This document shows, one piece after another, positions 4,401 to 13,801 of a stretch of 13,958 bases of DNA. The DNA is taken from the IMG/VR virus record IMGVR_UViG_3300026885_000050, positions 1-13,958 of that record; one strand, 5' to 3'. The notes below the pieces were generated by a model. The model saw only the letters and a list, made by a program, of their open reading frames with translations, searched no databases and was not told the origin of the DNA. Both the position numbers and the translations under genes were made by a program. Every line of letters starts with the position of its first letter. Positions within the stretch are counted from its first letter, which is position 1.

Positions 4401-5465
4401 ATGGCAAATATTATATATTACGTTTATCCACAACATCATGATGTTAGTTTTAAATTTGTAGCTAAAGAACATATAAAAATGCTAAAAGAGAGATATACAG
4501 TTTACGAAATCCCAGCTTTATCTTTCTATCAATTTACTCCTTTTCGTTACCCGATTTCTATAATTCATCCGTTCTTTTATTCAATGTGGCATTGGGGAAA
4601 AATAGAATTTTCTTTCTTTGAGCAATATAGAACTAAAACAAGTGCAATAATAGGCGTTGAAGTTGCTGACAGTGACAGAATTTCCGAGAAATTCATAGAT
4701 TATGCTAATAACTATGCTGATAGACTAATTGTAAATTCTGAATGGTCAGTTAAAACATTCAAGAACTCTGGTCTGAAAATTCCAATATTTAAAGTTGTAC
4801 ATAACTTTAACGAGAGACTTTTAGTAAAAGATGAGGAACTAAAAGTTGATGAACAAATTCGTTATATTGAGAAAATCAAAAATGAGAAGAAAATAAAACT
4901 AATTTTCATATCATTATGGCATTCTGATTATAGAAAAGGTGCAGATTTATTCCACAATATAGCTAGACAACTTCAGAAGGAAAGGAATGACATTTATTTT
5001 TTAGTAAAAAGTGGTGGGCCGAGGACAGATTTTCAAGACTTAAGAATGTTCAATCTGACTGGAAATACAGATTTTGATAACATTGTAAAGATGTATAGAA
5101 TTTCTGACTTATATCTTCTAACTAGCAGAGGTGGGAGTTTCGAGTTAAACGGTCTGGAAGCTTTTGTGTCAAAAATTCCAACAATCGCCACAAAAGGCGG
5201 GGCATGGGAAGAATATTTTCCTCCACAATTGAAAGATTTACTAATTGATTCTTGTAATTTCCCAACAATTCTTCCAAATAATCCAATTCATATAGGAAAA
5301 GGCGTAGAAATATGTATTGACAAAGCTGTGGATAAAGTTCTTGAAGTTTTAGACAATCTTGATGAATATAAAGCTAAAATTGAGGAAAATTATAATTTCT
5401 GGATTGAGAATTTTAGTTATAAAACTGTAAAAAAACAACTTTTTAATTCTTTAGATGGACTTTAA
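4401..5465 (+). CDS. GT-B (GT4 / group 1) glycosyltransferase (SIRV2 ORF356-like)
   Basis: ADRLIVNSEWS, RKGADL, SDLYLLTSRGGSFELNGLEAFVSKIPTIATKGG (GT4-type C-terminal donor-binding motif). SD GGTGA at 4389-4393. Confidence 0.9.
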   Translation: MANIIYYVYPQHHDVSFKFVAKEHIKMLKERYTVYEIPALSFYQFTPFRYPISIIHPFFYSMWHWGKIEFSFFEQYRTKTSAIIGVEVADSDRISEKFIDYANNYADRLIVNSEWSVKTFKNSGLKIPIFKVVHNFNERLLVKDEELKVDEQIRYIEKIKNEKKIKLIFISLWHSDYRKGADLFHNIARQLQKERNDIYFLVKSGGPRTDFQDLRMFNLTGNTDFDNIVKMYRISDLYLLTSRGGSFELNGLEAFVSKIPTIATKGGAWEEYFPPQLKDLLIDSCNFPTILPNNPIHIGKGVEICIDKAVDKVLEVLDNLDEYKAKIEENYNFWIENFSYKTVKKQLFNSLDGL

Positions 5466-5816
5466 AAATTCATGAACTTTTTGTAATTTATCTATATCTT
5501 TATTCTCCACTAATTTCTTAATTTCTTCATTTATCTCATCATATAAATTATTGATTTTGATTAATTCTAAAACTTCTTGAATTAACAAAATTGAGAATTT
5601 GTGAGTTTGTTCAACTATAGTATGGATTTTCTTAGCTAACTTTTCGCTATTGAATTTGTCAAATTCTATAGACAATACGGTATACGAATATTTTGCAATT
5701 ACTTTTTTCTCATTTAAAGTTATAAAAAGTCTGTATTTGTCTTCTACTATTATCTCAGCTTTATTGTTATTCAATCTTACGATTGTATTTTGTCTTAACT
5801 TTAATTCCCTAGTCAT
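5451..5816 (-). CDS. Hypothetical protein, 121 aa (start revised to MTRELK)
   Basis: The track start at 5882 is the GTCAT of the divergent promoter. A TATA-GTCAT element lies 18 nt upstream of ATG 5816. Overlaps the GT4 gene end by 15 nt convergently. Confidence 0.7.
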   Translation of the reverse strand: MTRELKLRQNTIVRLNNNKAEIIVEDKYRLFITLNEKKVIAKYSYTVLSIEFDKFNSEKLAKKIHTIVEQTHKFSILLIQEVLELIKINNLYDEINEEIKKLVENKDIDKLQKVHEFLKSI

Positions 5817-5834
5817 CAATATAATAAAAATATT

Positions 5835-5882
5835 ATGACATTTATATCTCTTTAAATTTTGAGTAATTCTTAAATTGGTCAT
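5835..5882. promoter_or_regulatory. Divergent pair of TATA-GTCAT promoters
   Basis: Minus strand: GATATAAATGTCAT (5835-5848) to ATG 5816. Plus strand: TTCTTAAATTGGTCAT (5867-5882) to ATG 5900. Confidence 0.7.
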
Positions 5883-5899
5883 AAAAACAAACCCATAAT

Positions 5900-7090
5900 A
5901 TGGAATATAAAAGACAAAGTTCGGGAATAATTAAAAGCTTTAATTCTCTAGATATTTTTTCTATAAATCTTTTGTACATGGGCATTATAAGCGGAATAAG
6001 TTATCCAATTTTTGTTTCTCAAATGATGAAAAATGTAAATCTATTAATTGCGGTCTTAATCGGTGCAATTTTCGAAATTCCGTTACTTGTAATGTATTAC
6101 ATTCTAACTAAGAAAATCCCGCTTAACGGCGGTGATTACGCATATATTCGAAACACATTTTCTCCAAAATTTTACACAATTTTCGGAATCTCTTTATGGT
6201 TAATTTATGTATTCTCAGCACCAATTTTAACAGATTTAGTACTTATGAATTTCAATATTCCTCTAATTCAGAAATTCTTAATTTCAGAACTATTATTTGC
6301 TATCGGTTTATTTAGTGTTGTTAAAAAAACAATTTATGCATATATAGTAGACGGATTAGCAATTTTACAAATAATTGTATCGCTAATTTTGCCAATTTCA
6401 AGTTTTCATTTCCAGATACAAAACTTTACAATATCAAATACTTTACTTTCAGCTTTACTATTTGACTTGTCAATGTTTCTCTTCATAAATGCGATTAGTT
6501 ATATAGCCGGAGAAACTAAAAATGTAGATAAAAATGCAAAAATCGGATATTTCTTGAGTTATTTTGTAGTTACCATATTAGCAATATTAGACAGTTTTTC
6601 AAACCTAAATATTCTATTTGTTCTATTTCCAATCTGGTATATGAGTTTCATTTTCGTAAATTCTATAATTCAAACTCGATTAGTCCAAAATATGACGTTT
6701 GATAGAATTCTTCCGGAAAAATTCACGAAAATTACCCCCAATATTTTATTGCTAATCTTCAGTGCAGATACAATTGCTAATGTTCTAGAAAATATCTTAG
6801 GATTTTCAATATCGTTTGGTTTCTCCGGATTGTTATTTATCTTCTGGAACTTCTTAATTGTCAGTTTCGCATTTTTGAAATTGACAAACAATAAACTATT
6901 ATTTTCAACTGTATTAATTAGTTTAATATTGCAGATATTTCTATTCTTCTACTTAGGACTACAAAATCAAATATTCTATAATTTCGTAATAGAAGGAAAT
7001 GCCATATTTACAATATTAAGAATATTGATAATGCCGATAATTGGCGGAATTATATACTTGTTAAGGAGAAAGACAATCCATGGAGAGTAA
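5900..7090 (+). CDS. APC-superfamily amino-acid permease-like membrane protein (SIRV2 ORF399-like)
   Basis: Many hydrophobic TM segments. PLNGGDYAYIRNTF (APC P..GG.Y.Y motif), SYIAGETKN (AGE.KN motif), RLVQNMTFDRILPEKF. Confidence 0.85.
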   Translation: MEYKRQSSGIIKSFNSLDIFSINLLYMGIISGISYPIFVSQMMKNVNLLIAVLIGAIFEIPLLVMYYILTKKIPLNGGDYAYIRNTFSPKFYTIFGISLWLIYVFSAPILTDLVLMNFNIPLIQKFLISELLFAIGLFSVVKKTIYAYIVDGLAILQIIVSLILPISSFHFQIQNFTISNTLLSALLFDLSMFLFINAISYIAGETKNVDKNAKIGYFLSYFVVTILAILDSFSNLNILFVLFPIWYMSFIFVNSIIQTRLVQNMTFDRILPEKFTKITPNILLLIFSADTIANVLENILGFSISFGFSGLLFIFWNFLIVSFAFLKLTNNKLLFSTVLISLILQIFLFFYLGLQNQIFYNFVIEGNAIFTILRILIMPIIGGIIYLLRRKTIHGE

Positions 7091-7092
7091 AA

Positions 7093-8028
7093 ATGAAGTT
7101 AGTTTTCGGACTAAGTTCGCCGACTTCTTATATTTTAAAGACAAATTTTCCAATTCTAATTAATCAATTAAGATTTAGAACAAAGACATGGAAAAATGAG
7201 ACTTGGGTCGACAGCGGGGGCTATCAAATTACAATTCATGGTCTAGAAATCTCAGTTGATGACGTCTTACAAAAATACAAAATGATAGACGCTTATGCAT
7301 TTTTTTCTCTAGATATACCTAGCATATTTTCTCCACTTGATAAAAAGAATTTCGAATATTTCGAATATCTTTATACAAAAATTGAGTATATAGAAAAAAT
7401 TATACCAGTAATTCATATTTATCCAATTCAAGATATAGATGAAGCTATAGATTTTTATAAACAATATACTTATTATTTTGCAGTTGGAGGACTTATAGCA
7501 TCTTCAAAAATGAAAATTTTGATATATACTTTTCCGTGGATCTATTACATAAGGAGGAAGGTTCCATATCTTCACGTTCTAGGAATGTCAGCACCATATT
7601 TTATTCAAGCCTTTGACTTTGCTGAGAGCATGGACACAGCTACATATAGCAAAGTAACGGGCTATAGAGATATTTTTTGGTTTGATGGGTCTAGAAGATA
7701 TGTAGGCAATCAAAAGACAGTTAGGGAAAAATATAAACTTACTGAGGAAGAGAAAGAGAAACTTTTCGAATTTCTGGACAAGATTAATTTCCCATTCGAA
7801 TATGATTTATCAAACAGAAAAATTATAGAAGTTATGAACGCTTATATTCTAATATACAATAATTGGAAGATTGATAATAAATATACAAGATATGCTGACA
7901 AACTTAGGAAAATGGGACTAGACAGCCTTGTAATGGAGTTAATTAGAAATTATAAAATTGCTAATGAGATATTGAAAGAGAAAAGGAAAATAAAGAAAGA
8001 AGAAGATGAATTAGAACTTGAGATATAA
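7093..8028 (+). CDS. tRNA-guanine transglycosylase-like / DpdA-like protein (SIRV2 ORF310-like)
   Basis: TGT catalytic signature VDSGGYQ, then SLDIP, IIPVIH, FAVGG, LHVLG, SMDTAT (second catalytic Asp). Starts 2 nt after the permease stop. Confidence 0.85.
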   Translation: MKLVFGLSSPTSYILKTNFPILINQLRFRTKTWKNETWVDSGGYQITIHGLEISVDDVLQKYKMIDAYAFFSLDIPSIFSPLDKKNFEYFEYLYTKIEYIEKIIPVIHIYPIQDIDEAIDFYKQYTYYFAVGGLIASSKMKILIYTFPWIYYIRRKVPYLHVLGMSAPYFIQAFDFAESMDTATYSKVTGYRDIFWFDGSRRYVGNQKTVREKYKLTEEEKEKLFEFLDKINFPFEYDLSNRKIIEVMNAYILIYNNWKIDNKYTRYADKLRKMGLDSLVMELIRNYKIANEILKEKRKIKKEEDELELEI

Positions 8029-8045
8029 AAATTCATATTTTCACA

Positions 8046-8624
8046 TCATTCTTCTTCAACATCAACATCACTAACATCAATATCATCAATAACATTTTCA
8101 TCATTAATAATCTTGATAGCATCTTCTATTTTATCTTTAAATTCTGCTTTAATTTCCTCAGAGCTTAACAGACCATAAACTTCATTACTTAAAGCTTCAG
8201 AAATTGTATCTACATTTATTTCTTCTAAATTTACAAAAATACATAAATCCAAATATCCATAAGCCTCTAGTATATTATCTATGTATCTTTTGACAATTCT
8301 CTTTTTTTCTTCTTCTGGAAAATCAAATTCAACAATAACTTCTTCAAATGCATAATTTAATTCATCAATTTGTTTGTTTAATTGTATCATAATTTTAGAA
8401 TTTTTCATGAATGCATTGAATAATTCTTGTAATTCCTTTTCATCAAAATATTGTAAATTCCAATTATCTTTTTCTACAATTTCTGAAATCATTTGGATTA
8501 TTGCATCTGCTACAATATCTTTAAAATTTGTATAACAATTTTGAATAATATTATCAACATTTAACCATATAACAATATTTTTCTTAAATCTTTCTTTATC
8601 TAATCCTCTTAAAACTATACTCAT
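8046..8624 (-). CDS. Highly acidic hypothetical protein, 192 aa
   Basis: Intact ORF, D/E-rich with tail DENVIDDIDVSDVDVEEE. Upstream TTTTTAAATATGTCAT promoter (8650-8665, minus) and SD-like GTGA. Confidence 0.8.
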   Translation of the reverse strand: MSIVLRGLDKERFKKNIVIWLNVDNIIQNCYTNFKDIVADAIIQMISEIVEKDNWNLQYFDEKELQELFNAFMKNSKIMIQLNKQIDELNYAFEEVIVEFDFPEEEKKRIVKRYIDNILEAYGYLDLCIFVNLEEINVDTISEALSNEVYGLLSSEEIKAEFKDKIEDAIKIINDENVIDDIDVSDVDVEEE

Positions 8625-10548: not shown

Positions 10549-10776
10549 TTATCTTTTACAAATTACATATTTCCAACCGTTATCATTTACTAATACAACT
10601 TCTCTTTTATTTTCTGGACATTGATCAATTGTTGATAAGGGTAATGCATAAGCTTTATAGTGATCACAACTATTTGTAAGCGGGAAATAATTAGACGTTT
10701 TTATTAATAATTCCCTATGACATATCGGACATTTATAAACAATTAAATCTCCAAATTTCTCAACTTTTAATTCCAT
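10549..10776 (-). CDS. Small putative Zn-binding protein (CPIC...SCDH), paralog 1, 75 aa
   Basis: SD GAGGTGA (contains the track's GTG) precedes ATG 10776 (MELKVEK). Motif shared with 13076-13330 and 13526-13801. Confidence 0.8.
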   Translation of the reverse strand: MELKVEKFGDLIVYKCPICHRELLIKTSNYFPLTNSCDHYKAYALPLSTIDQCPENKREVVLVNDNGWKYVICKR

Positions 10777-10788
10777 AACTTTCACCTC

Positions 10789-11481
10789 TTATTCTTGTTT
10801 TTTAGATTTTAAATATATAATTAAGTAATGTTTTTCCGGATTTAACATCACTTTGTTTTCTTGATTATCTGGAGTTTTTATTGTTAATTCTTTAACTCCT
10901 TTAGCATACATAAAATATGCTATATTCGGCTTTGAGATTAGACCGGTTATCTCAACATTTTTCGAAAACTTTAGCTCATAATTCTCAATTGTTAGTTCAT
11001 TTTTAATATCAAAATTAAGTTCATTGGTATATTTTAGCATTGGAGTTTCGTAAATTTCTAATTGCCTATTCTTATAAATCAACGGGAATTGGTATAATTG
11101 TCCTTTCACATATTTATCTAAAATCATTATTTGTTTTTCATCATAATTAATGAGCAATCTTTTTTCTTCCAAATCATAAAATTCTATAATTCTCATAATG
11201 AGGTCTGTCAAATCATTTAGATTTTCAGCAAATCTTCCACGTGAAGATATAAAGATTTTTGGCGGTGCAGTTATATAATATATGCCCCTAGCTTCTGCTA
11301 AAGCATAATTAATTAATTCATAACAACCGCTGAACTTTCTTCCAGATTTAGAAATATATTTTGCACAATCAATATAATCGCCTTGAACTGTACTAATCTT
11401 GGTAACTTGACCTTCTATATGTTTAACCATAAAGACTTTTGGAAGGTAATTTAGATATTTTAGAATTTTTACCTCAGACAT
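10789..11481 (-). CDS. acrIIIB1: Anti-CRISPR AcrIIIB1-like protein (SIRV2 gp48 family), paralog B
   Basis: EVKILKYLNYLPKVFM, DCAKYISKSGRKFSGC, RGIYY, LLINYD..I.ILDKYVKGQLYQFPLI match motifs I recall from SIRV2 gp48 (EVK.IK.LN.LP.VF; NCA.Y.SRSG....GC; GIYFTP; YD.Y.KG..Y.FPL). Full-length similarity to 11767-12489. Confidence 0.8.
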   Translation of the reverse strand: MSEVKILKYLNYLPKVFMVKHIEGQVTKISTVQGDYIDCAKYISKSGRKFSGCYELINYALAEARGIYYITAPPKIFISSRGRFAENLNDLTDLIMRIIEFYDLEEKRLLINYDEKQIMILDKYVKGQLYQFPLIYKNRQLEIYETPMLKYTNELNFDIKNELTIENYELKFSKNVEITGLISKPNIAYFMYAKGVKELTIKTPDNQENKVMLNPEKHYLIIYLKSKKQE

Positions 11482-11766: not shown

Positions 11767-12489
11767 CTAAGTCCTAGGTTTTGGGTGAGTTATTAAATAG
11801 TATTTGTTAACTTTTAGCATAACTGTATCTGTAGAACTTGTTGGCGATTTTAAAGTCAATGTCACTTCATTTTCCGGATGTATTAAAAATGCCACGCCGG
11901 GGTCTGAATATAAATCTCTAGTTAATGTAGGACTGGAAAACTGTATTTCGTGATGATAAATTGTTAGGCTATTGGAATGATTAAAACTAAGATTTAAATC
12001 ATTATTTATTGGCGGAACTTCATAAATTTCTAGATAATCTTGGTTGTATATTAGGTTAAATTGGTACAATTGACCTTTAATATAGTAATCGTAAATTGTT
12101 ATCGAATAATTATCATAGGAAATCAATAATTCTTTAAATCTGAGGTTTAGAAGTTCTATCTCTTTTAGTATAATGTTTTTCATATCCTCAAGACTTCTAG
12201 TAATTTTACTTCTTTTGTTAACTGAAAATATCGGTGGTGCTGGAGTATAATATATGCCTCTGGTCTGTAGAAGCTCATCTTCAAGATATTTAAAACAACC
12301 GCTGAAAGTTAATCTAGATCTTGAAATATAATTTGTGCAATTTTCGAAATATTTTGCTAATATTGAGATCTTGGTAACCTCACCATCAAGATGTTTTATC
12401 ATGAAGACTGATGGCAGATATTCTATTTGCTTTAGTATTTTTACTTCATATTTTTTAGTTTGACTTTCTTGACTTGAATTTTGAGACAT
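11767..12489 (-). CDS. acrIIIB1: Anti-CRISPR AcrIIIB1-like protein (SIRV2 gp48 family), paralog A
   Basis: EVKILKQIEYLPSVFM, NCTNYISRSRLTFSGC, GIYYTP, LLISYDNYSITIYDYYIKGQLYQF, PGVAFLIHPE and C-terminal THPKPR (recalled gp48 SHPRPR). SD GGGTGA upstream. Confidence 0.85.
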   Translation of the reverse strand: MSQNSSQESQTKKYEVKILKQIEYLPSVFMIKHLDGEVTKISILAKYFENCTNYISRSRLTFSGCFKYLEDELLQTRGIYYTPAPPIFSVNKRSKITRSLEDMKNIILKEIELLNLRFKELLISYDNYSITIYDYYIKGQLYQFNLIYNQDYLEIYEVPPINNDLNLSFNHSNSLTIYHHEIQFSSPTLTRDLYSDPGVAFLIHPENEVTLTLKSPTSSTDTVMLKVNKYYLITHPKPRT

Positions 12490-13075: not shown

Positions 13076-13330
13076 TTAAGATGGGCTTTGTTTGGGATAT
13101 AAAATATAAATGCTTGTTCCAGACCAAATCCTCAGTACAGCGTTTTTATTGAGTCTTTGTGCGTTCAATTCATAATAAAGATTACCAAACTCTCTCCACT
13201 CAAAATGCTGACATGAAGATTTTATTACGCCACCATCATATTCATTTGTCCATGCTAGCTCTGTGTTATCAATTGGACAATAATAGACTATAATTTGACC
13301 GTGATATTTCTCAATTGGACGTATTACCAT
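13076..13330 (-). CDS. Small putative Zn-binding protein (CPID...SCQH), paralog 2, 84 aa
   Basis: Own promoter (13365-13381), GGGGG SD-like tract and terminator. Motif shared with the two paralogs. Confidence 0.8.
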   Translation of the reverse strand: MVIRPIEKYHGQIIVYYCPIDNTELAWTNEYDGGVIKSSCQHFEWREFGNLYYELNAQRLNKNAVLRIWSGTSIYILYPKQSPS

Positions 13331-13525: not shown

Positions 13526-13801
13526 TTAACTTTTACGAGGAACGATAAAACTTACATACTTTTTGAACTCAAACTTCATTACCGCTTTCGCTTCATATTT
13601 TGGAATATTCTGAGAACTTTTCGGGTCACGATATACATCAATGATTTCAAAATGACTGCATGAAGATAACGGTTCAACAACATCTTTATGGAATTTTCTA
13701 AGAAAATATTCTGGATCGTTCGTAGCTAATATGTCTCCACAAATTGGACACTTGATATAGATTTTCTTGTCCACATGTTCAACTTTTAGTTGATACTTCA
13801 T
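13526..13801 (-). CDS. Small putative Zn-binding protein (CPIC...SCSH), paralog 3, 91 aa
   Basis: Intact ORF with own promoter and terminator. Motif shared with the two paralogs. Confidence 0.8.
   Translation of the reverse strand: MKYQLKVEHVDKKIYIKCPICGDILATNDPEYFLRKFHKDVVEPLSSCSHFEIIDVYRDPKSSQNIPKYEAKAVMKFEFKKYVSFIVPRKS

What the first reader, a model, noticed from the sequence alone, without database searches (positions are those of the whole stretch)
5900..8028. Permease coupled to a zinc-less TGT/DpdA-like enzyme: possible base-salvage and modification module
Seen: one promoter and a 2-nt gap between the genes. The enzyme keeps both catalytic Asp motifs (DSGGYQ, SMD) but has no cysteine at all, so it lacks the CxCxxC...H zinc site of canonical tRNA TGTs, and it is too short for the C-terminal PUA region of typical archaeal TGT. 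Known: TGT/DpdA enzymes exchange guanine for 7-deazaguanine bases, viral DpdA proteins modify DNA against restriction, and SIRVs carry both genes. Inference: the compact motif layout looks more like viral DpdA. The APC-fold partner may import a precursor, giving a two-gene genome-modification or host-tRNA-editing system. No preQ0 synthesis genes are in this window.
Basis: partly seen in the sequence, partly recalled or inferred. Interest (0 to 1): 0.65.

Follow-up and report, generated by a model that had tools for sequence, protein, structure and literature searches.

The report
Rudivirus permease plus DpdA gene pair
Two neighbouring genes of a Sulfolobus rod-shaped virus encode a host-derived amino-acid-type membrane transporter and a DpdA-type enzyme that probably swaps guanine in DNA for a 7-deazaguanine base. 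Both genes were already catalogued, and I found no good evidence that the transporter feeds the enzyme.

Summary
ORFs 5900-7090 (396 aa) and 7093-8028 (311 aa) are 2 nt apart. The second has DSGGYQ and SMD, no cysteine, and no room for PUA domains.

The window is a 43%-complete SIRV-like rudivirus fragment. The enzyme folds as a TGT barrel (pLDDT 92; Z 21 to arcTGT/TGT). It falls in phrog_887 together with the proven DNA transglycosylases DpdA of phages 9g and CAjan. Those are also about 310 aa and lack CxCxxC, so "zinc-less and short" is normal for phage DpdA1. Hutinet et al. 2019 already list the SIRV orthologues as DpdA.

The partner is a compact 12-helix APC permease. Its nearest relatives are Sulfolobaceae amino-acid-type permeases and SLC7-like structures.

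The tandem pair is fixed in all 23 SIRV-like contigs and both genes are under purifying selection. Elsewhere the two separate:
- SSRV1 and ARV2 keep the permease without DpdA.
- STSV1/2 and Sulfolobales chromosomes pair DpdA with an ArcS-core gene, not a permease.
- Sulfolobales hosts encode QueC and arcTGT themselves.

So the DpdA reading is supported but known. The salvage-import reading is unsupported but not excluded. Side finding: a conserved chromosomal DpdA-like/ArcS-core/HerA/NurA array.

The parts
5869..5876 (+). TATA-like box (CTTAAATT), about 27 nt upstream of the permease ATG. Candidate archaeal promoter for a leaderless or short-leader transcript.
   Evidence: Read from the sequence. 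The block TCTTAAATTGGTCATAAAA is conserved in SIRV4/5, and SIRV2 has TTTATTTA at the same place. Function is inferred. AT-rich genomes give such motifs by chance.
5900..7090 (+). APC-superfamily permease, 396 aa, 12 predicted TM helices with broken TM1 and TM6. Orthologue of SIRV2 gp14/ORF399.
   Evidence: phrog_8289, E 4.6e-193. AF2 model pLDDT 88. Foldseek: AdiC 3e-8 with TMq 0.7, also GkApcT, ApcT and LAT. The family profile hits GkApcT at 1.6e-23. 24 of 28 homologues match PF13520. dN/dS 0.08-0.17.
7082..7085 (+). GGAG Shine-Dalgarno-like motif, 7 nt before the second ATG and inside the 3' end of the permease ORF.
   Evidence: Present in the window and SIRV5 but not in SIRV4 or SIRV2, so it is weak evidence for translational coupling.
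7093..8028 (+). DpdA-type guanine transglycosylase, 311 aa, TGT TIM barrel plus a C-terminal helical region, no zinc site. Orthologue of SIRV2 gp13/ORF310. Proposed roles: D40 general acid/base, D74 and H108 base recognition, D181 nucleophile.
   Evidence: phrog_887, E 5e-65; the same PHROG holds 9g and CAjan DpdA. AF2 model pLDDT 92. Z 21.4 to arcTGT 1IQ8. Invariant residues in A1. hhalign to DpdA1 94.9% and to arcTGT 93.4%. dN/dS 0.07-0.12.
8029..8045 (.). 17-nt spacer to the convergent gene 8046-8624(-), containing a short T run (8038-8041). Possible end of the transcription unit.
   Evidence: Sequence only. Weak.

Best explanation
The locus is a two-gene accessory cassette of an SIRV-like rudivirus, probably transcribed as one unit.

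Gene 2 is a DpdA-family DNA guanine transglycosylase of the phage DpdA1 architecture (about 310 aa, no zinc subdomain, no tRNA-binding domains). Inferred mechanism: Asp181 attacks C1' of a target deoxyguanosine and Asp40 acts as general acid/base. [quoted passage not shown] Guanine is exchanged for a 7-deazaguanine base, most likely preQ0 or a close derivative taken from the host's own archaeosine pathway. This would give low-level modification of viral DNA after replication, as a shield against host nucleases.

Gene 1 is a compact 12-TM APC permease captured from Sulfolobales hosts. It most likely takes up an amino-acid-like or organic-cation substrate as an auxiliary metabolic function.

Shown here: the folds, family placement, conserved residues, gene order and selection. 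Inferred: the chemistry, the DNA target, the substrate of either protein, and co-transcription. A functional link between the two proteins is not required by the data.
For: Enzyme:
- TGT fold.
- Invariant D40/D74/H108/D181 across viral and chromosomal relatives.
- phrog_887 is shared with experimentally validated 9g and CAjan DpdA and hits 0 of 14 cellular control genomes.
- hhalign to DpdA1 spans residues 22-252, including the region that replaces the zinc subdomain. The arcTGT alignment stops at residue 190.
- 9g and CAjan DpdA also lack CxCxxC.
- The family's usual neighbour is an ArcS-core (DUF5591) gene, in STSV2/STSV4 and on Sulfolobales chromosomes. This ties the family to 7-deazaguanine chemistry.
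- STSV2 DNA carries dCDG: PMC10516641.
- The SIRV proteins are listed as DpdA and S. islandicus has FolE/QueD/QueE/Gat-QueC/arcTGT: PMC6884629.
- QueC and arcTGT were found in the Sulfolobales genomes tested.

Permease:
- APC fold and profile.
- Nearest cellular relatives are Sulfolobaceae APC permeases in metabolic neighbourhoods.

Both genes are under purifying selection.
Against: - No rudiviral DNA has been analysed for 7-deazaguanines in the literature I could search.
- The only tested relative, STSV2, showed just 0.04% of G modified, with an unexpected base.
- P0002 gives no hit to Pfam TGT or to PADLOC DpdA models. Its N-terminal half is slightly more similar to arcTGT (24% against 17% identity in hhalign).
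- The H108-to-Gln/His mapping differs between two alignments.
- P0001 itself does not reach Pfam AA_permease_2 at E<=1, so its substrate class is an extrapolation.
- The strict permease-DpdA tandem in 23/23 SIRV-like contigs and their adjacency in SRV would also fit a functional link.
Confidence: 0.6

Rival explanations
1. Salvage module. The permease imports a free 7-deazaguanine base or precursor (preQ0, CDG, preQ1, queuine) that the co-transcribed DpdA inserts into viral DNA.
For: - Tandem with a gap of -4 to 8 nt in all SIRV-like genomes, over 66-100% protein identity.
- The two genes are adjacent, though convergent, in SRV.
- Both are under purifying selection.
- The source of the 7-deazaguanine in STSV2 is an acknowledged open question (PMC10516641).
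- Hutinet 2019 proposes that DpdA-only phages may rely on uptake.
Against: - Complete SSRV1 and ARV2 genomes have the permease but no DpdA-like gene in a profile search at E<=1.
- STSV1/2 and at least 10 chromosomal loci have the DpdA-like gene without a permease.
- In SBRV1 the genes lie 4.6 kb apart on opposite strands.
- The nearest sequence and structure relatives are amino-acid/polyamine transporters, not nucleobase carriers.
- There is no match to known preQ0/queuosine-precursor transporter families (Pfam scan empty).
- Sulfolobales hosts make preQ0 themselves.
- All tandem cases belong to one viral lineage, so they count as about one evolutionary event.
Confidence: 0.12
2. tRNA-directed enzyme. 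The TGT-like protein acts on host tRNA (G15 or another position), as its RefSeq name 'queuine tRNA-ribosyltransferase' implies, to retune translation during infection.
For: - The best solved-structure sequence hit is arcTGT (1IQ8, E 1.3e-4).
- The N-terminal motifs (DSGGYQ, LDIP) resemble arcTGT more than DpdA1.
- From memory, not checked here: the PUA domain of arcTGT is reported to be dispensable for archaeosine formation.
Against: - It lacks the zinc subdomain and all C-terminal tRNA-binding domains.
- The host already has a full arcTGT.
- It groups with DNA-acting phage DpdA in phrog_887, which hits no cellular TGT.
- The relative in STSV2 is associated with modified DNA.
Confidence: 0.1
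3. Unrelated neighbours, or a repurposed enzyme. The two genes merely share a variable genome region. The TGT-like protein may have a non-nucleic-acid target (for example protein deazaguanylation, as for the TGT-like Cap10 of type IV CBASS) or an anti-defence role.
For: - In SIRV2 the pair sits among small accessory and anti-CRISPR genes.
- A TGT-family enzyme that conjugates a 7-deazapurine to protein has been described (bioRxiv 10.1101/2025.04.06.647259, abstract seen).
- Chromosomal relatives sit next to HerA/NurA genes.
Against: The full catalytic triad of Asp residues and the DpdA-type His are invariant. No QueC-like Cap9 partner is present in the window. Nothing in the data points to a protein substrate.
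Confidence: 0.05

Closest known systems
Phage DpdA1 (Enterobacteria phage 9g, Escherichia phage CAjan), DNA guanine transglycosylases
   Same: Same PHROG (phrog_887). Same size (306-317 against 311 aa). No CxCxxC...H zinc site. The Asp/Asp/His/Asp set is conserved. The C-terminal 'L-x-E-x-E...L..FLE..gF.FE...N.W' region is homologous (hhalign 94.9%, residues 22-252). Found in a 'DpdA-only' genome that must use host precursor.
   Different: Only about 17-21% identity. The N-terminal motifs are arcTGT-like (DSGGYQ, LDIP instead of DSGAFS, LDGIG). The host is a crenarchaeon. No activity data exist.
STSV1/STSV2 DpdA (Bicaudaviridae) with ArcS2; STSV2 DNA contains dCDG
   Same: Same zinc-less Sulfolobales family, about 40% identity. 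Archaeal hyperthermophile virus.
   Different: The STSV gene overlaps a DUF5591/ArcS-core gene and has no permease. The rudiviral clade is separate and monophyletic (98/99 support).
Archaeosine tRNA-guanine transglycosylase (arcTGT; P. horikoshii 1IQ8; Sulfolobales about 500 aa)
   Same: TIM-barrel catalytic domain (Z 21.4, 261 residues, rmsd 3.5 A). The three Asp are conserved. Profile hit E 1.3e-4. hhalign 93.4%.
   Different: No zinc site and no C1/C2/PUA domains. His replaces the base-reading Gln in two of three alignments. Not detected by Pfam PF01702. The similarity ends right after the nucleophile Asp.
Bacterial DpdA of the Dpd restriction-modification system (Salmonella Montevideo, 7UI4)
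   Same: DNA-acting TGT paralogue with Asp95/Asp130/His181/Asp256. His181 aligns with H108 (PMC10164549).
   Different: bDpdA keeps the CXCX2CX22H zinc site and has large insertions. It scores only E 0.2 against the A1 profile. PADLOC models do not hit P0002. No DpdB or DpdC here.
APC/SLC7-type amino-acid transporters (GkApcT 5OQT, AdiC, ApcT, LAT1/2) and uncharacterised Sulfolobaceae APC permeases
   Same: LeuT-type 12-TM fold with broken TM1 and TM6. Family profile E 1.6e-23 to GkApcT. Shares the GGDY and AGExK motifs. Clusters with 483-488 aa Sulfolobus permeases.
   Different: About 90-140 residues shorter than the cellular relatives. P0001 alone falls below Pfam detection. Substrate unknown.
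Known 7-deazapurine transporters (YhhQ/COG1738 preQ0 importer; ECF-type queuosine-precursor S-components, the latter from memory)
   Different: Different fold and family. The Pfam scan of P0001 returns none of these families. Hutinet 2019 searched viruses for YhhQ and found no correlation with DpdA groups.

Membership tests
TGT superfamily (tRNA/DNA guanine transglycosylase fold) | (beta/alpha)8 barrel of the TGT type | tested here: met
   AF2 model pLDDT 92.1. Foldseek arcTGT 3e-8. VIA Z 21.4 to 1IQ8, 21.3 to human QTRT1, about 20 to Z. mobilis TGT.
TGT superfamily (tRNA/DNA guanine transglycosylase fold) | Three active-site Asp (general acid/base, base-binding, nucleophile) | tested here: met
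   D40, D74 and D181 are invariant in 26 sequences. They align to the DSG, LDIP and FDSASY motifs of arcTGT and to DpdA1.
TGT superfamily (tRNA/DNA guanine transglycosylase fold) | Match to Pfam PF01702 (TGT) | tested here: not met
   No hit at E<=1 for the protein or at E<=10 in the six-frame window. The same model finds arcTGT at about 1e-75 in Sulfolobales genomes.
Canonical tRNA TGT / arcTGT | Structural zinc site CxCxxC...H | tested here: not met
   0 Cys in P0002 and no CxCxxC in any family member. The host arcTGT has CSCIIC.
Canonical tRNA TGT / arcTGT | C-terminal tRNA-binding domains (C1, C2, PUA) in arcTGT | tested here: not met
   311 aa in total. The structural alignment covers only chain residues 34-358 of the 577-residue 1IQ8 chain.
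Phage DpdA1 | Profile membership together with experimentally validated DpdA (9g, CAjan) | tested here: met
   phrog_887: P0002 5e-65, 9g 2.5e-100, CAjan 2.3e-98, 0 of 14 cellular controls.
Phage DpdA1 | Architecture: about 300-320 aa, no zinc subdomain, conserved C-terminal helical region, His at the base-reading position | tested here: met
   The H108-to-His141 (9g) alignment is.
Phage DpdA1 | Inserts preQ0 or a derivative into DNA | not testable with these tools
   Needs LC-MS/MS or an in vitro exchange assay. No published data for rudiviruses were found.
Bacterial Dpd system DpdA | Zinc site and DpdA-specific insertions; DpdB/DpdC partners | tested here: not met
   No zinc motif. PADLOC gives no hit for P0002. 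7UI4 scores only E 0.2. Neighbours are unrelated.
APC superfamily, AA_permease_2 (PF13520) | LeuT-type fold, 5+5 inverted repeat with unwound TM1 and TM6 | tested here: met
   Model pLDDT 88, with helices broken at residues 27-29 and 193-198. Foldseek AdiC, GkApcT, ApcT, TMq 0.64-0.72.
APC superfamily, AA_permease_2 (PF13520) | Pfam PF13520 match | tested here: inconclusive
   P0001 alone: no hit at E<=1. 24 of 28 aligned homologues match, best 5e-23. Some 84%-identical proteins carry a precomputed PF13520 hit. The profile against PDB APC chains gives 1.6e-23.
Known 7-deazapurine importers (YhhQ/COG1738 and others) | Sequence or fold membership | tested here: not met
   The Pfam scan of P0001 is empty and the fold is APC.

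The most novel reading that the evidence does not exclude
The rudiviral permease is a new, APC-type importer of a 7-deazaguanine base (preQ0, CDG or a related scavenged purine). Together with the co-transcribed DpdA it would form a self-contained 'import and insert' DNA-modification cassette. That would also suggest where Sulfolobales viruses get their 7-deazaguanine when the host pool is limiting.
Probability: 0.1. Interest if true: 0.75.

Novelty: new member of a known kind. Interest (0 to 1): 0.35.

Why it matters
If SIRV DNA does carry 7-deazaguanine, the best-studied crenarchaeal virus model would gain a DNA-modification layer. SIRV2 has gene-editing tools, so this could be tested directly against Sulfolobus restriction and CRISPR systems.

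The cassette itself is not new. The genes are annotated in RefSeq and listed as DpdA in a 2019 survey.

What this analysis adds:
1. The "zinc-less, short" architecture is the phage DpdA1 norm, not an anomaly.
2. The Sulfolobales family mixes arcTGT-like N-terminal motifs with a DpdA1-like C-terminal half.
3. The comparative data argue against an obligate permease-DpdA partnership.
4. The chromosomal relatives sit in a conserved DpdA-like/ArcS-core/HerA/NurA array. This could be an archaeal counterpart of the bacterial Dpd modification-restriction system.

Tried and rejected
- Single-sequence phmmer of both proteins against PDB found nothing useful.
- Pfam and NCBIfam gave no hit for either protein.
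- PADLOC gave no hit for either protein or for the chromosomal DpdA-like/ArcS-core genes.
- Literature searches for SIRV together with deazaguanine or DpdA, for ORF399/ORF310, and for gp13/gp14 found no text on function, expression or knock-outs. Expression timing and dispensability therefore remain unknown to me.
- The sequencing-run search found only DNA metagenomes and no RNA, so read laying was not used and co-transcription could not be tested.
- I asked whether the 207-aa ORF downstream of the permease in SSRV1/ARV2 is a degenerate DpdA. Foldseek gave a weak match to the ARV2 protein (E 0.013, TMt 0.51). hhalign showed no signal (probability 0.9%). Left unresolved.
- The tree cannot root the family. 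arcTGT and DpdA1 attach on branches of 3.7 and 4.5 substitutions per site, so I make no claim about which is the ancestor.
- The sigma-70 promoter scanner was not used because it does not apply to archaea.
Full report
**What the window is**

The 13,958-nt window is the whole of an IMG/VR record that CheckV rates 43% complete. At the DNA level it is 77-82% identical to Sulfolobus islandicus rod-shaped viruses SIRV4-11 and to Yellowstone SIRV isolates. It is therefore a fragment of an SIRV-like rudivirus from a hot-spring metagenome. Near-identical sequence occurs in several hot-spring DNA runs, and no RNA runs hold it.

**Checking the observation**

- Two ORFs lie on the + strand: 5900-7090 (396 aa, P0001) and 7093-8028 (311 aa, P0002). 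They are separated by 2 nt.
- P0002 contains DSGGYQ (residues 40-45), LDIP (73-76) and SMD (179-181). It has no cysteine.
- The pair is flanked by opposite-strand ORFs, 5451-5882 and 8046-8624.
- A TATA-like CTTAAATT (5869-5876) lies about 27 nt before the first ATG and is conserved in SIRV4/5.
- A GGAG lies 7 nt before the second ATG.
- Leaderless first genes and SD-led internal genes are usual in Sulfolobales (general knowledge). One transcription unit is therefore plausible, but it is not demonstrated.
- The window has no match to QueC, QueD or DUF5591/ArcS, and no Radical_SAM match above the cut-off. FolE was not searched.

**The enzyme: fold and conserved residues**

- Pfam, NCBIfam and PADLOC give no hit. 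PHROGs places the protein in phrog_887 at E 5e-65.
- An alignment of 26 relatives (A1) shows these invariant positions: D40-S-G-G-x-Q, D74, H108, G132, H161-x-L-G and D181. There is no conserved Cys or His that could form a zinc site.
- The A1 profile hits P. horikoshii arcTGT (1IQ8) at E 1.3e-4 and Salmonella DpdA (7UI4) at E 0.2.
- The AlphaFold model is confident (pLDDT 92.1, pTM 0.89).
- The model superposes on arcTGT (Z 21.4, 261 residues, rmsd 3.5 A, catalytic domain only), on human QTRT1 (Z 21.3) and on bacterial TGT (Z about 20).
- It is therefore a TGT-superfamily barrel with the full Asp set.

**The enzyme: which branch of the superfamily**

- phrog_887 also contains the DpdA proteins of phages 9g (E 2.5e-100) and CAjan (E 2.3e-98). 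Both are shown experimentally to put preQ0 into DNA (PMC6884629).
- The model hits none of 14 cellular control genomes.
- 9g and CAjan DpdA are 317 and 306 aa, and they too lack CxCxxC.
- hhalign of A1 against these two gives 94.9% probability and E 4.6e-8 over residues 22-252. This includes the region after the nucleophile Asp, where both families share an L-x-E-x-E...FLE..gF.FE...N.W pattern.
- Against Sulfolobales arcTGT the match is of similar strength (93.4%, E 2.6e-7). It ends at residue 190, just before the arcTGT zinc motif CSCIIC.
- The invariant H108 aligns with the base-reading His of bDpdA and DpdA1, and with Gln of arcTGT in the hmmsearch alignment. One hhalign alignment shifts this by five residues, so the mapping is probable rather than certain.
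- Bacterial DpdA keeps a CXCX2CX22H zinc site (PMC10164549).
- Conclusion: "zinc-less and short" separates this protein from tRNA TGTs and from bDpdA, but it is the normal state of phage DpdA1. The N-terminal motifs are arcTGT-like, so the Sulfolobales family looks intermediate in sequence.

**The enzyme: what is already published**

- Hutinet et al. 2019 list SIRV1-11, SRV and STSV1/2 proteins as DpdA homologues in the "DpdA only" class. They also report that S. islandicus encodes FolE, QueD, QueE, Gat-QueC and arcTGT.
- The 2023 follow-up found dCDG at 0.04% of G in STSV2 DNA and left the source of the base open.
- No paper text that I could search links SIRV with 7-deazaguanine.

**Relatives of the enzyme and their neighbours**

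- The family is confined to Sulfolobales viruses and chromosomes.
- In the tree, all rudiviral copies form one clade with 98/99 support: SIRVs as sister to SBRV1 plus SRV. The STSV copies nest among Saccharolobus and Aramenus MAG copies. arcTGT and DpdA1 join on very long branches, so the root is open.
- In STSV2 and STSV4 the gene overlaps a DUF5591 (ArcS-core) gene.
- The same overlap occurs on chromosomes of Acidianus manzaensis, A. brierleyi, a Saccharolobus MAG and others. There it is often followed by a HerA-like ATPase, a protein of about 1,010 aa, one of about 230 aa and a NurA nuclease.
- In Stygiolobus sp. CP850M a NurA-domain gene follows the TGT-like gene directly.
- Four of the five genomes tested have a separate canonical arcTGT, and all five have QueC.
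- The recurrent ArcS-core partner ties the family to 7-deazaguanine chemistry. It also shows that the family's usual partner is not a permease.

**The permease**

- P0001 matches phrog_8289 ("aminoacid permease", E 4.6e-193) but no Pfam model by itself.
- A full scan of 1.84 billion representative proteins gives only 55 hits at E<=1e-3. These are rudiviral permeases (SBRV1, SSRV1, SRV) followed by Sulfolobaceae chromosomal APC permeases of 483-540 aa.
- The cellular hits sit in ordinary metabolic neighbourhoods, for example next to an M20 peptidase.
- 24 of 28 aligned homologues match PF13520.
- The family profile hits GkApcT at 1.6e-23, and also CAT1, LAT2 and AdiC.
- The model (pLDDT 88) has 12 helices with broken TM1 and TM6. 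It matches AdiC, GkApcT, ApcT and LAT at TMq 0.64-0.72.
- In the tree, the rudiviral permeases and a cellular Sulfolobus subgroup form one clade (support 98), and SSRV1 sits beside the cellular members. This points to capture from, or exchange with, hosts.
- Nothing links this subfamily to nucleobases.

**Are the two genes coupled?**

For a link:
- The tandem is present in SIRV1-11 and in 23 of 23 SIRV-like IMG/VR contigs, with gaps from -4 to 8 nt, across 66-100% (DpdA) and 69-100% (permease) identity.
- In SRV the two genes are adjacent but convergent.
- Both genes evolve under strong purifying selection (dN/dS 0.07-0.17, with dS near saturation).

Against a link:
- The SIRV cases are one lineage.
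- In SBRV1 the genes are 4.6 kb apart on opposite strands.
- The complete genomes of SSRV1 and ARV2 keep the permease but have no DpdA-like gene in a profile search at E<=1.
- STSV1/2 and all chromosomal loci have the DpdA-like gene without a permease.
- The hosts make preQ0 themselves.

It is not excluded.

One loose end remains. The 207-aa ORF that follows the permease in ARV2 and SSRV1 gave a weak Foldseek match to the DpdA model (the hit was to the ARV2 protein; E 0.013, TMt 0.51). There was no profile similarity.

**Conclusion**

- The locus is an accessory cassette: a host-derived APC permease followed by a DpdA1-type transglycosylase.
- The most likely function of the enzyme is post-replicative exchange of guanine in viral DNA for host-made preQ0 or a near derivative, by the Asp-nucleophile double-displacement mechanism established for TGT and DpdA. 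This is inferred from homology only.
- The permease most likely imports an amino-acid-like solute.
- A precursor-import role is possible. I put it at about 0.1.
- The finding is a new metagenomic member of an already catalogued gene pair.
- The more interesting lead is the chromosomal DpdA-like/ArcS-core/HerA/NurA array.

Noticed in passing
L003:8001-15735 (Acidianus manzaensis CP020477); also L004, L018, L019, L021, L023, and L024:10001-12207: Chromosomal relatives of the viral DpdA-like gene head a conserved same-strand array: TGT-like (about 295 aa), overlapping DUF5591/ArcS core (about 180 aa), HerA-like DUF87 ATPase (about 540 aa), an unknown protein of about 1,010 aa, an unknown of about 230 aa, and NurA (about 335-359 aa). 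In Stygiolobus sp. CP850M a 422-aa NurA-domain gene follows the TGT-like gene directly. Of five genomes checked for arcTGT (those of L019, L021, L023, L024 and L028), four have a separate canonical copy. This is a candidate archaeal Dpd-like modification/restriction island. PADLOC recognises only the HerA part.
   Followed up: partly
L015, L016, L017, L020 (genome contigs): Contigs encoding proteins 69-73% identical to the SIRV DpdA-like protein are filed in bacterial assemblies (Streptomyces gamaensis, Planomonospora alba JCM 9373, Paenochrobactrum glaciei JCM 15115, Nocardioides koreensis JCM 16022). This is most likely rudivirus DNA contaminating those assemblies. It also explains a RefSeq 'MULTISPECIES ... 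[Bacteria]' name on the SIRV3-like protein.
   Followed up: no
L013:4264-4887 (SSRV1) and L014:4264-4887 (ARV2): In the two hoswirudiviruses, the slot directly downstream of the permease (where SIRVs have DpdA) holds a conserved 207-aa ORF with no Pfam hit. The ARV2 protein gave a weak Foldseek match to the DpdA model (E 0.013, TMt 0.51), but hhalign shows no sequence similarity. It is unresolved whether this is a degenerate barrel.
   Followed up: partly
window 10789-11481(-) and 11767-12489(-); also 10549-10785(-), 13076-13330(-), 13526-13801(-): Two neighbouring ORFs of 230 and 240 aa are clear paralogues (shared KILK..YLP.VFM.KH..G.VTKIS...RGIYY..APP start). Three small ORFs of 78-91 aa share a CPIC/CPID...C.H zinc-ribbon-like pattern. 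This looks like a repeated gene module near the fragment's right end.
   Followed up: no
window 5451-5882(-): A 143-aa ORF (phrog_21700, unknown function) lies on the opposite strand between the glycosyltransferase and the permease, overlapping the glycosyltransferase 3' end by 15 nt. In SIRV4/5 the glycosyltransferase is followed by the permease after only 26 nt. This ORF is therefore a lineage-specific insertion, which makes the permease-DpdA pair a separate unit here.
   Followed up: partly
L037:2110-4235 (IMGVR_UViG_3300026906_000071): A second IMG/VR contig (10,945 nt) encodes proteins 100% identical to both P0001 and P0002, so the same virus was assembled at least twice.
   Followed up: no
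window 5900-8028: Both proteins of the pair lack cysteine entirely (0 of 396 and 0 of 311 residues), while the neighbouring methyltransferase ORF 2128-2610 is Cys-rich. The zero-Cys state of the enzyme is therefore not by itself a signal of a lost metal site.
   Followed up: partly
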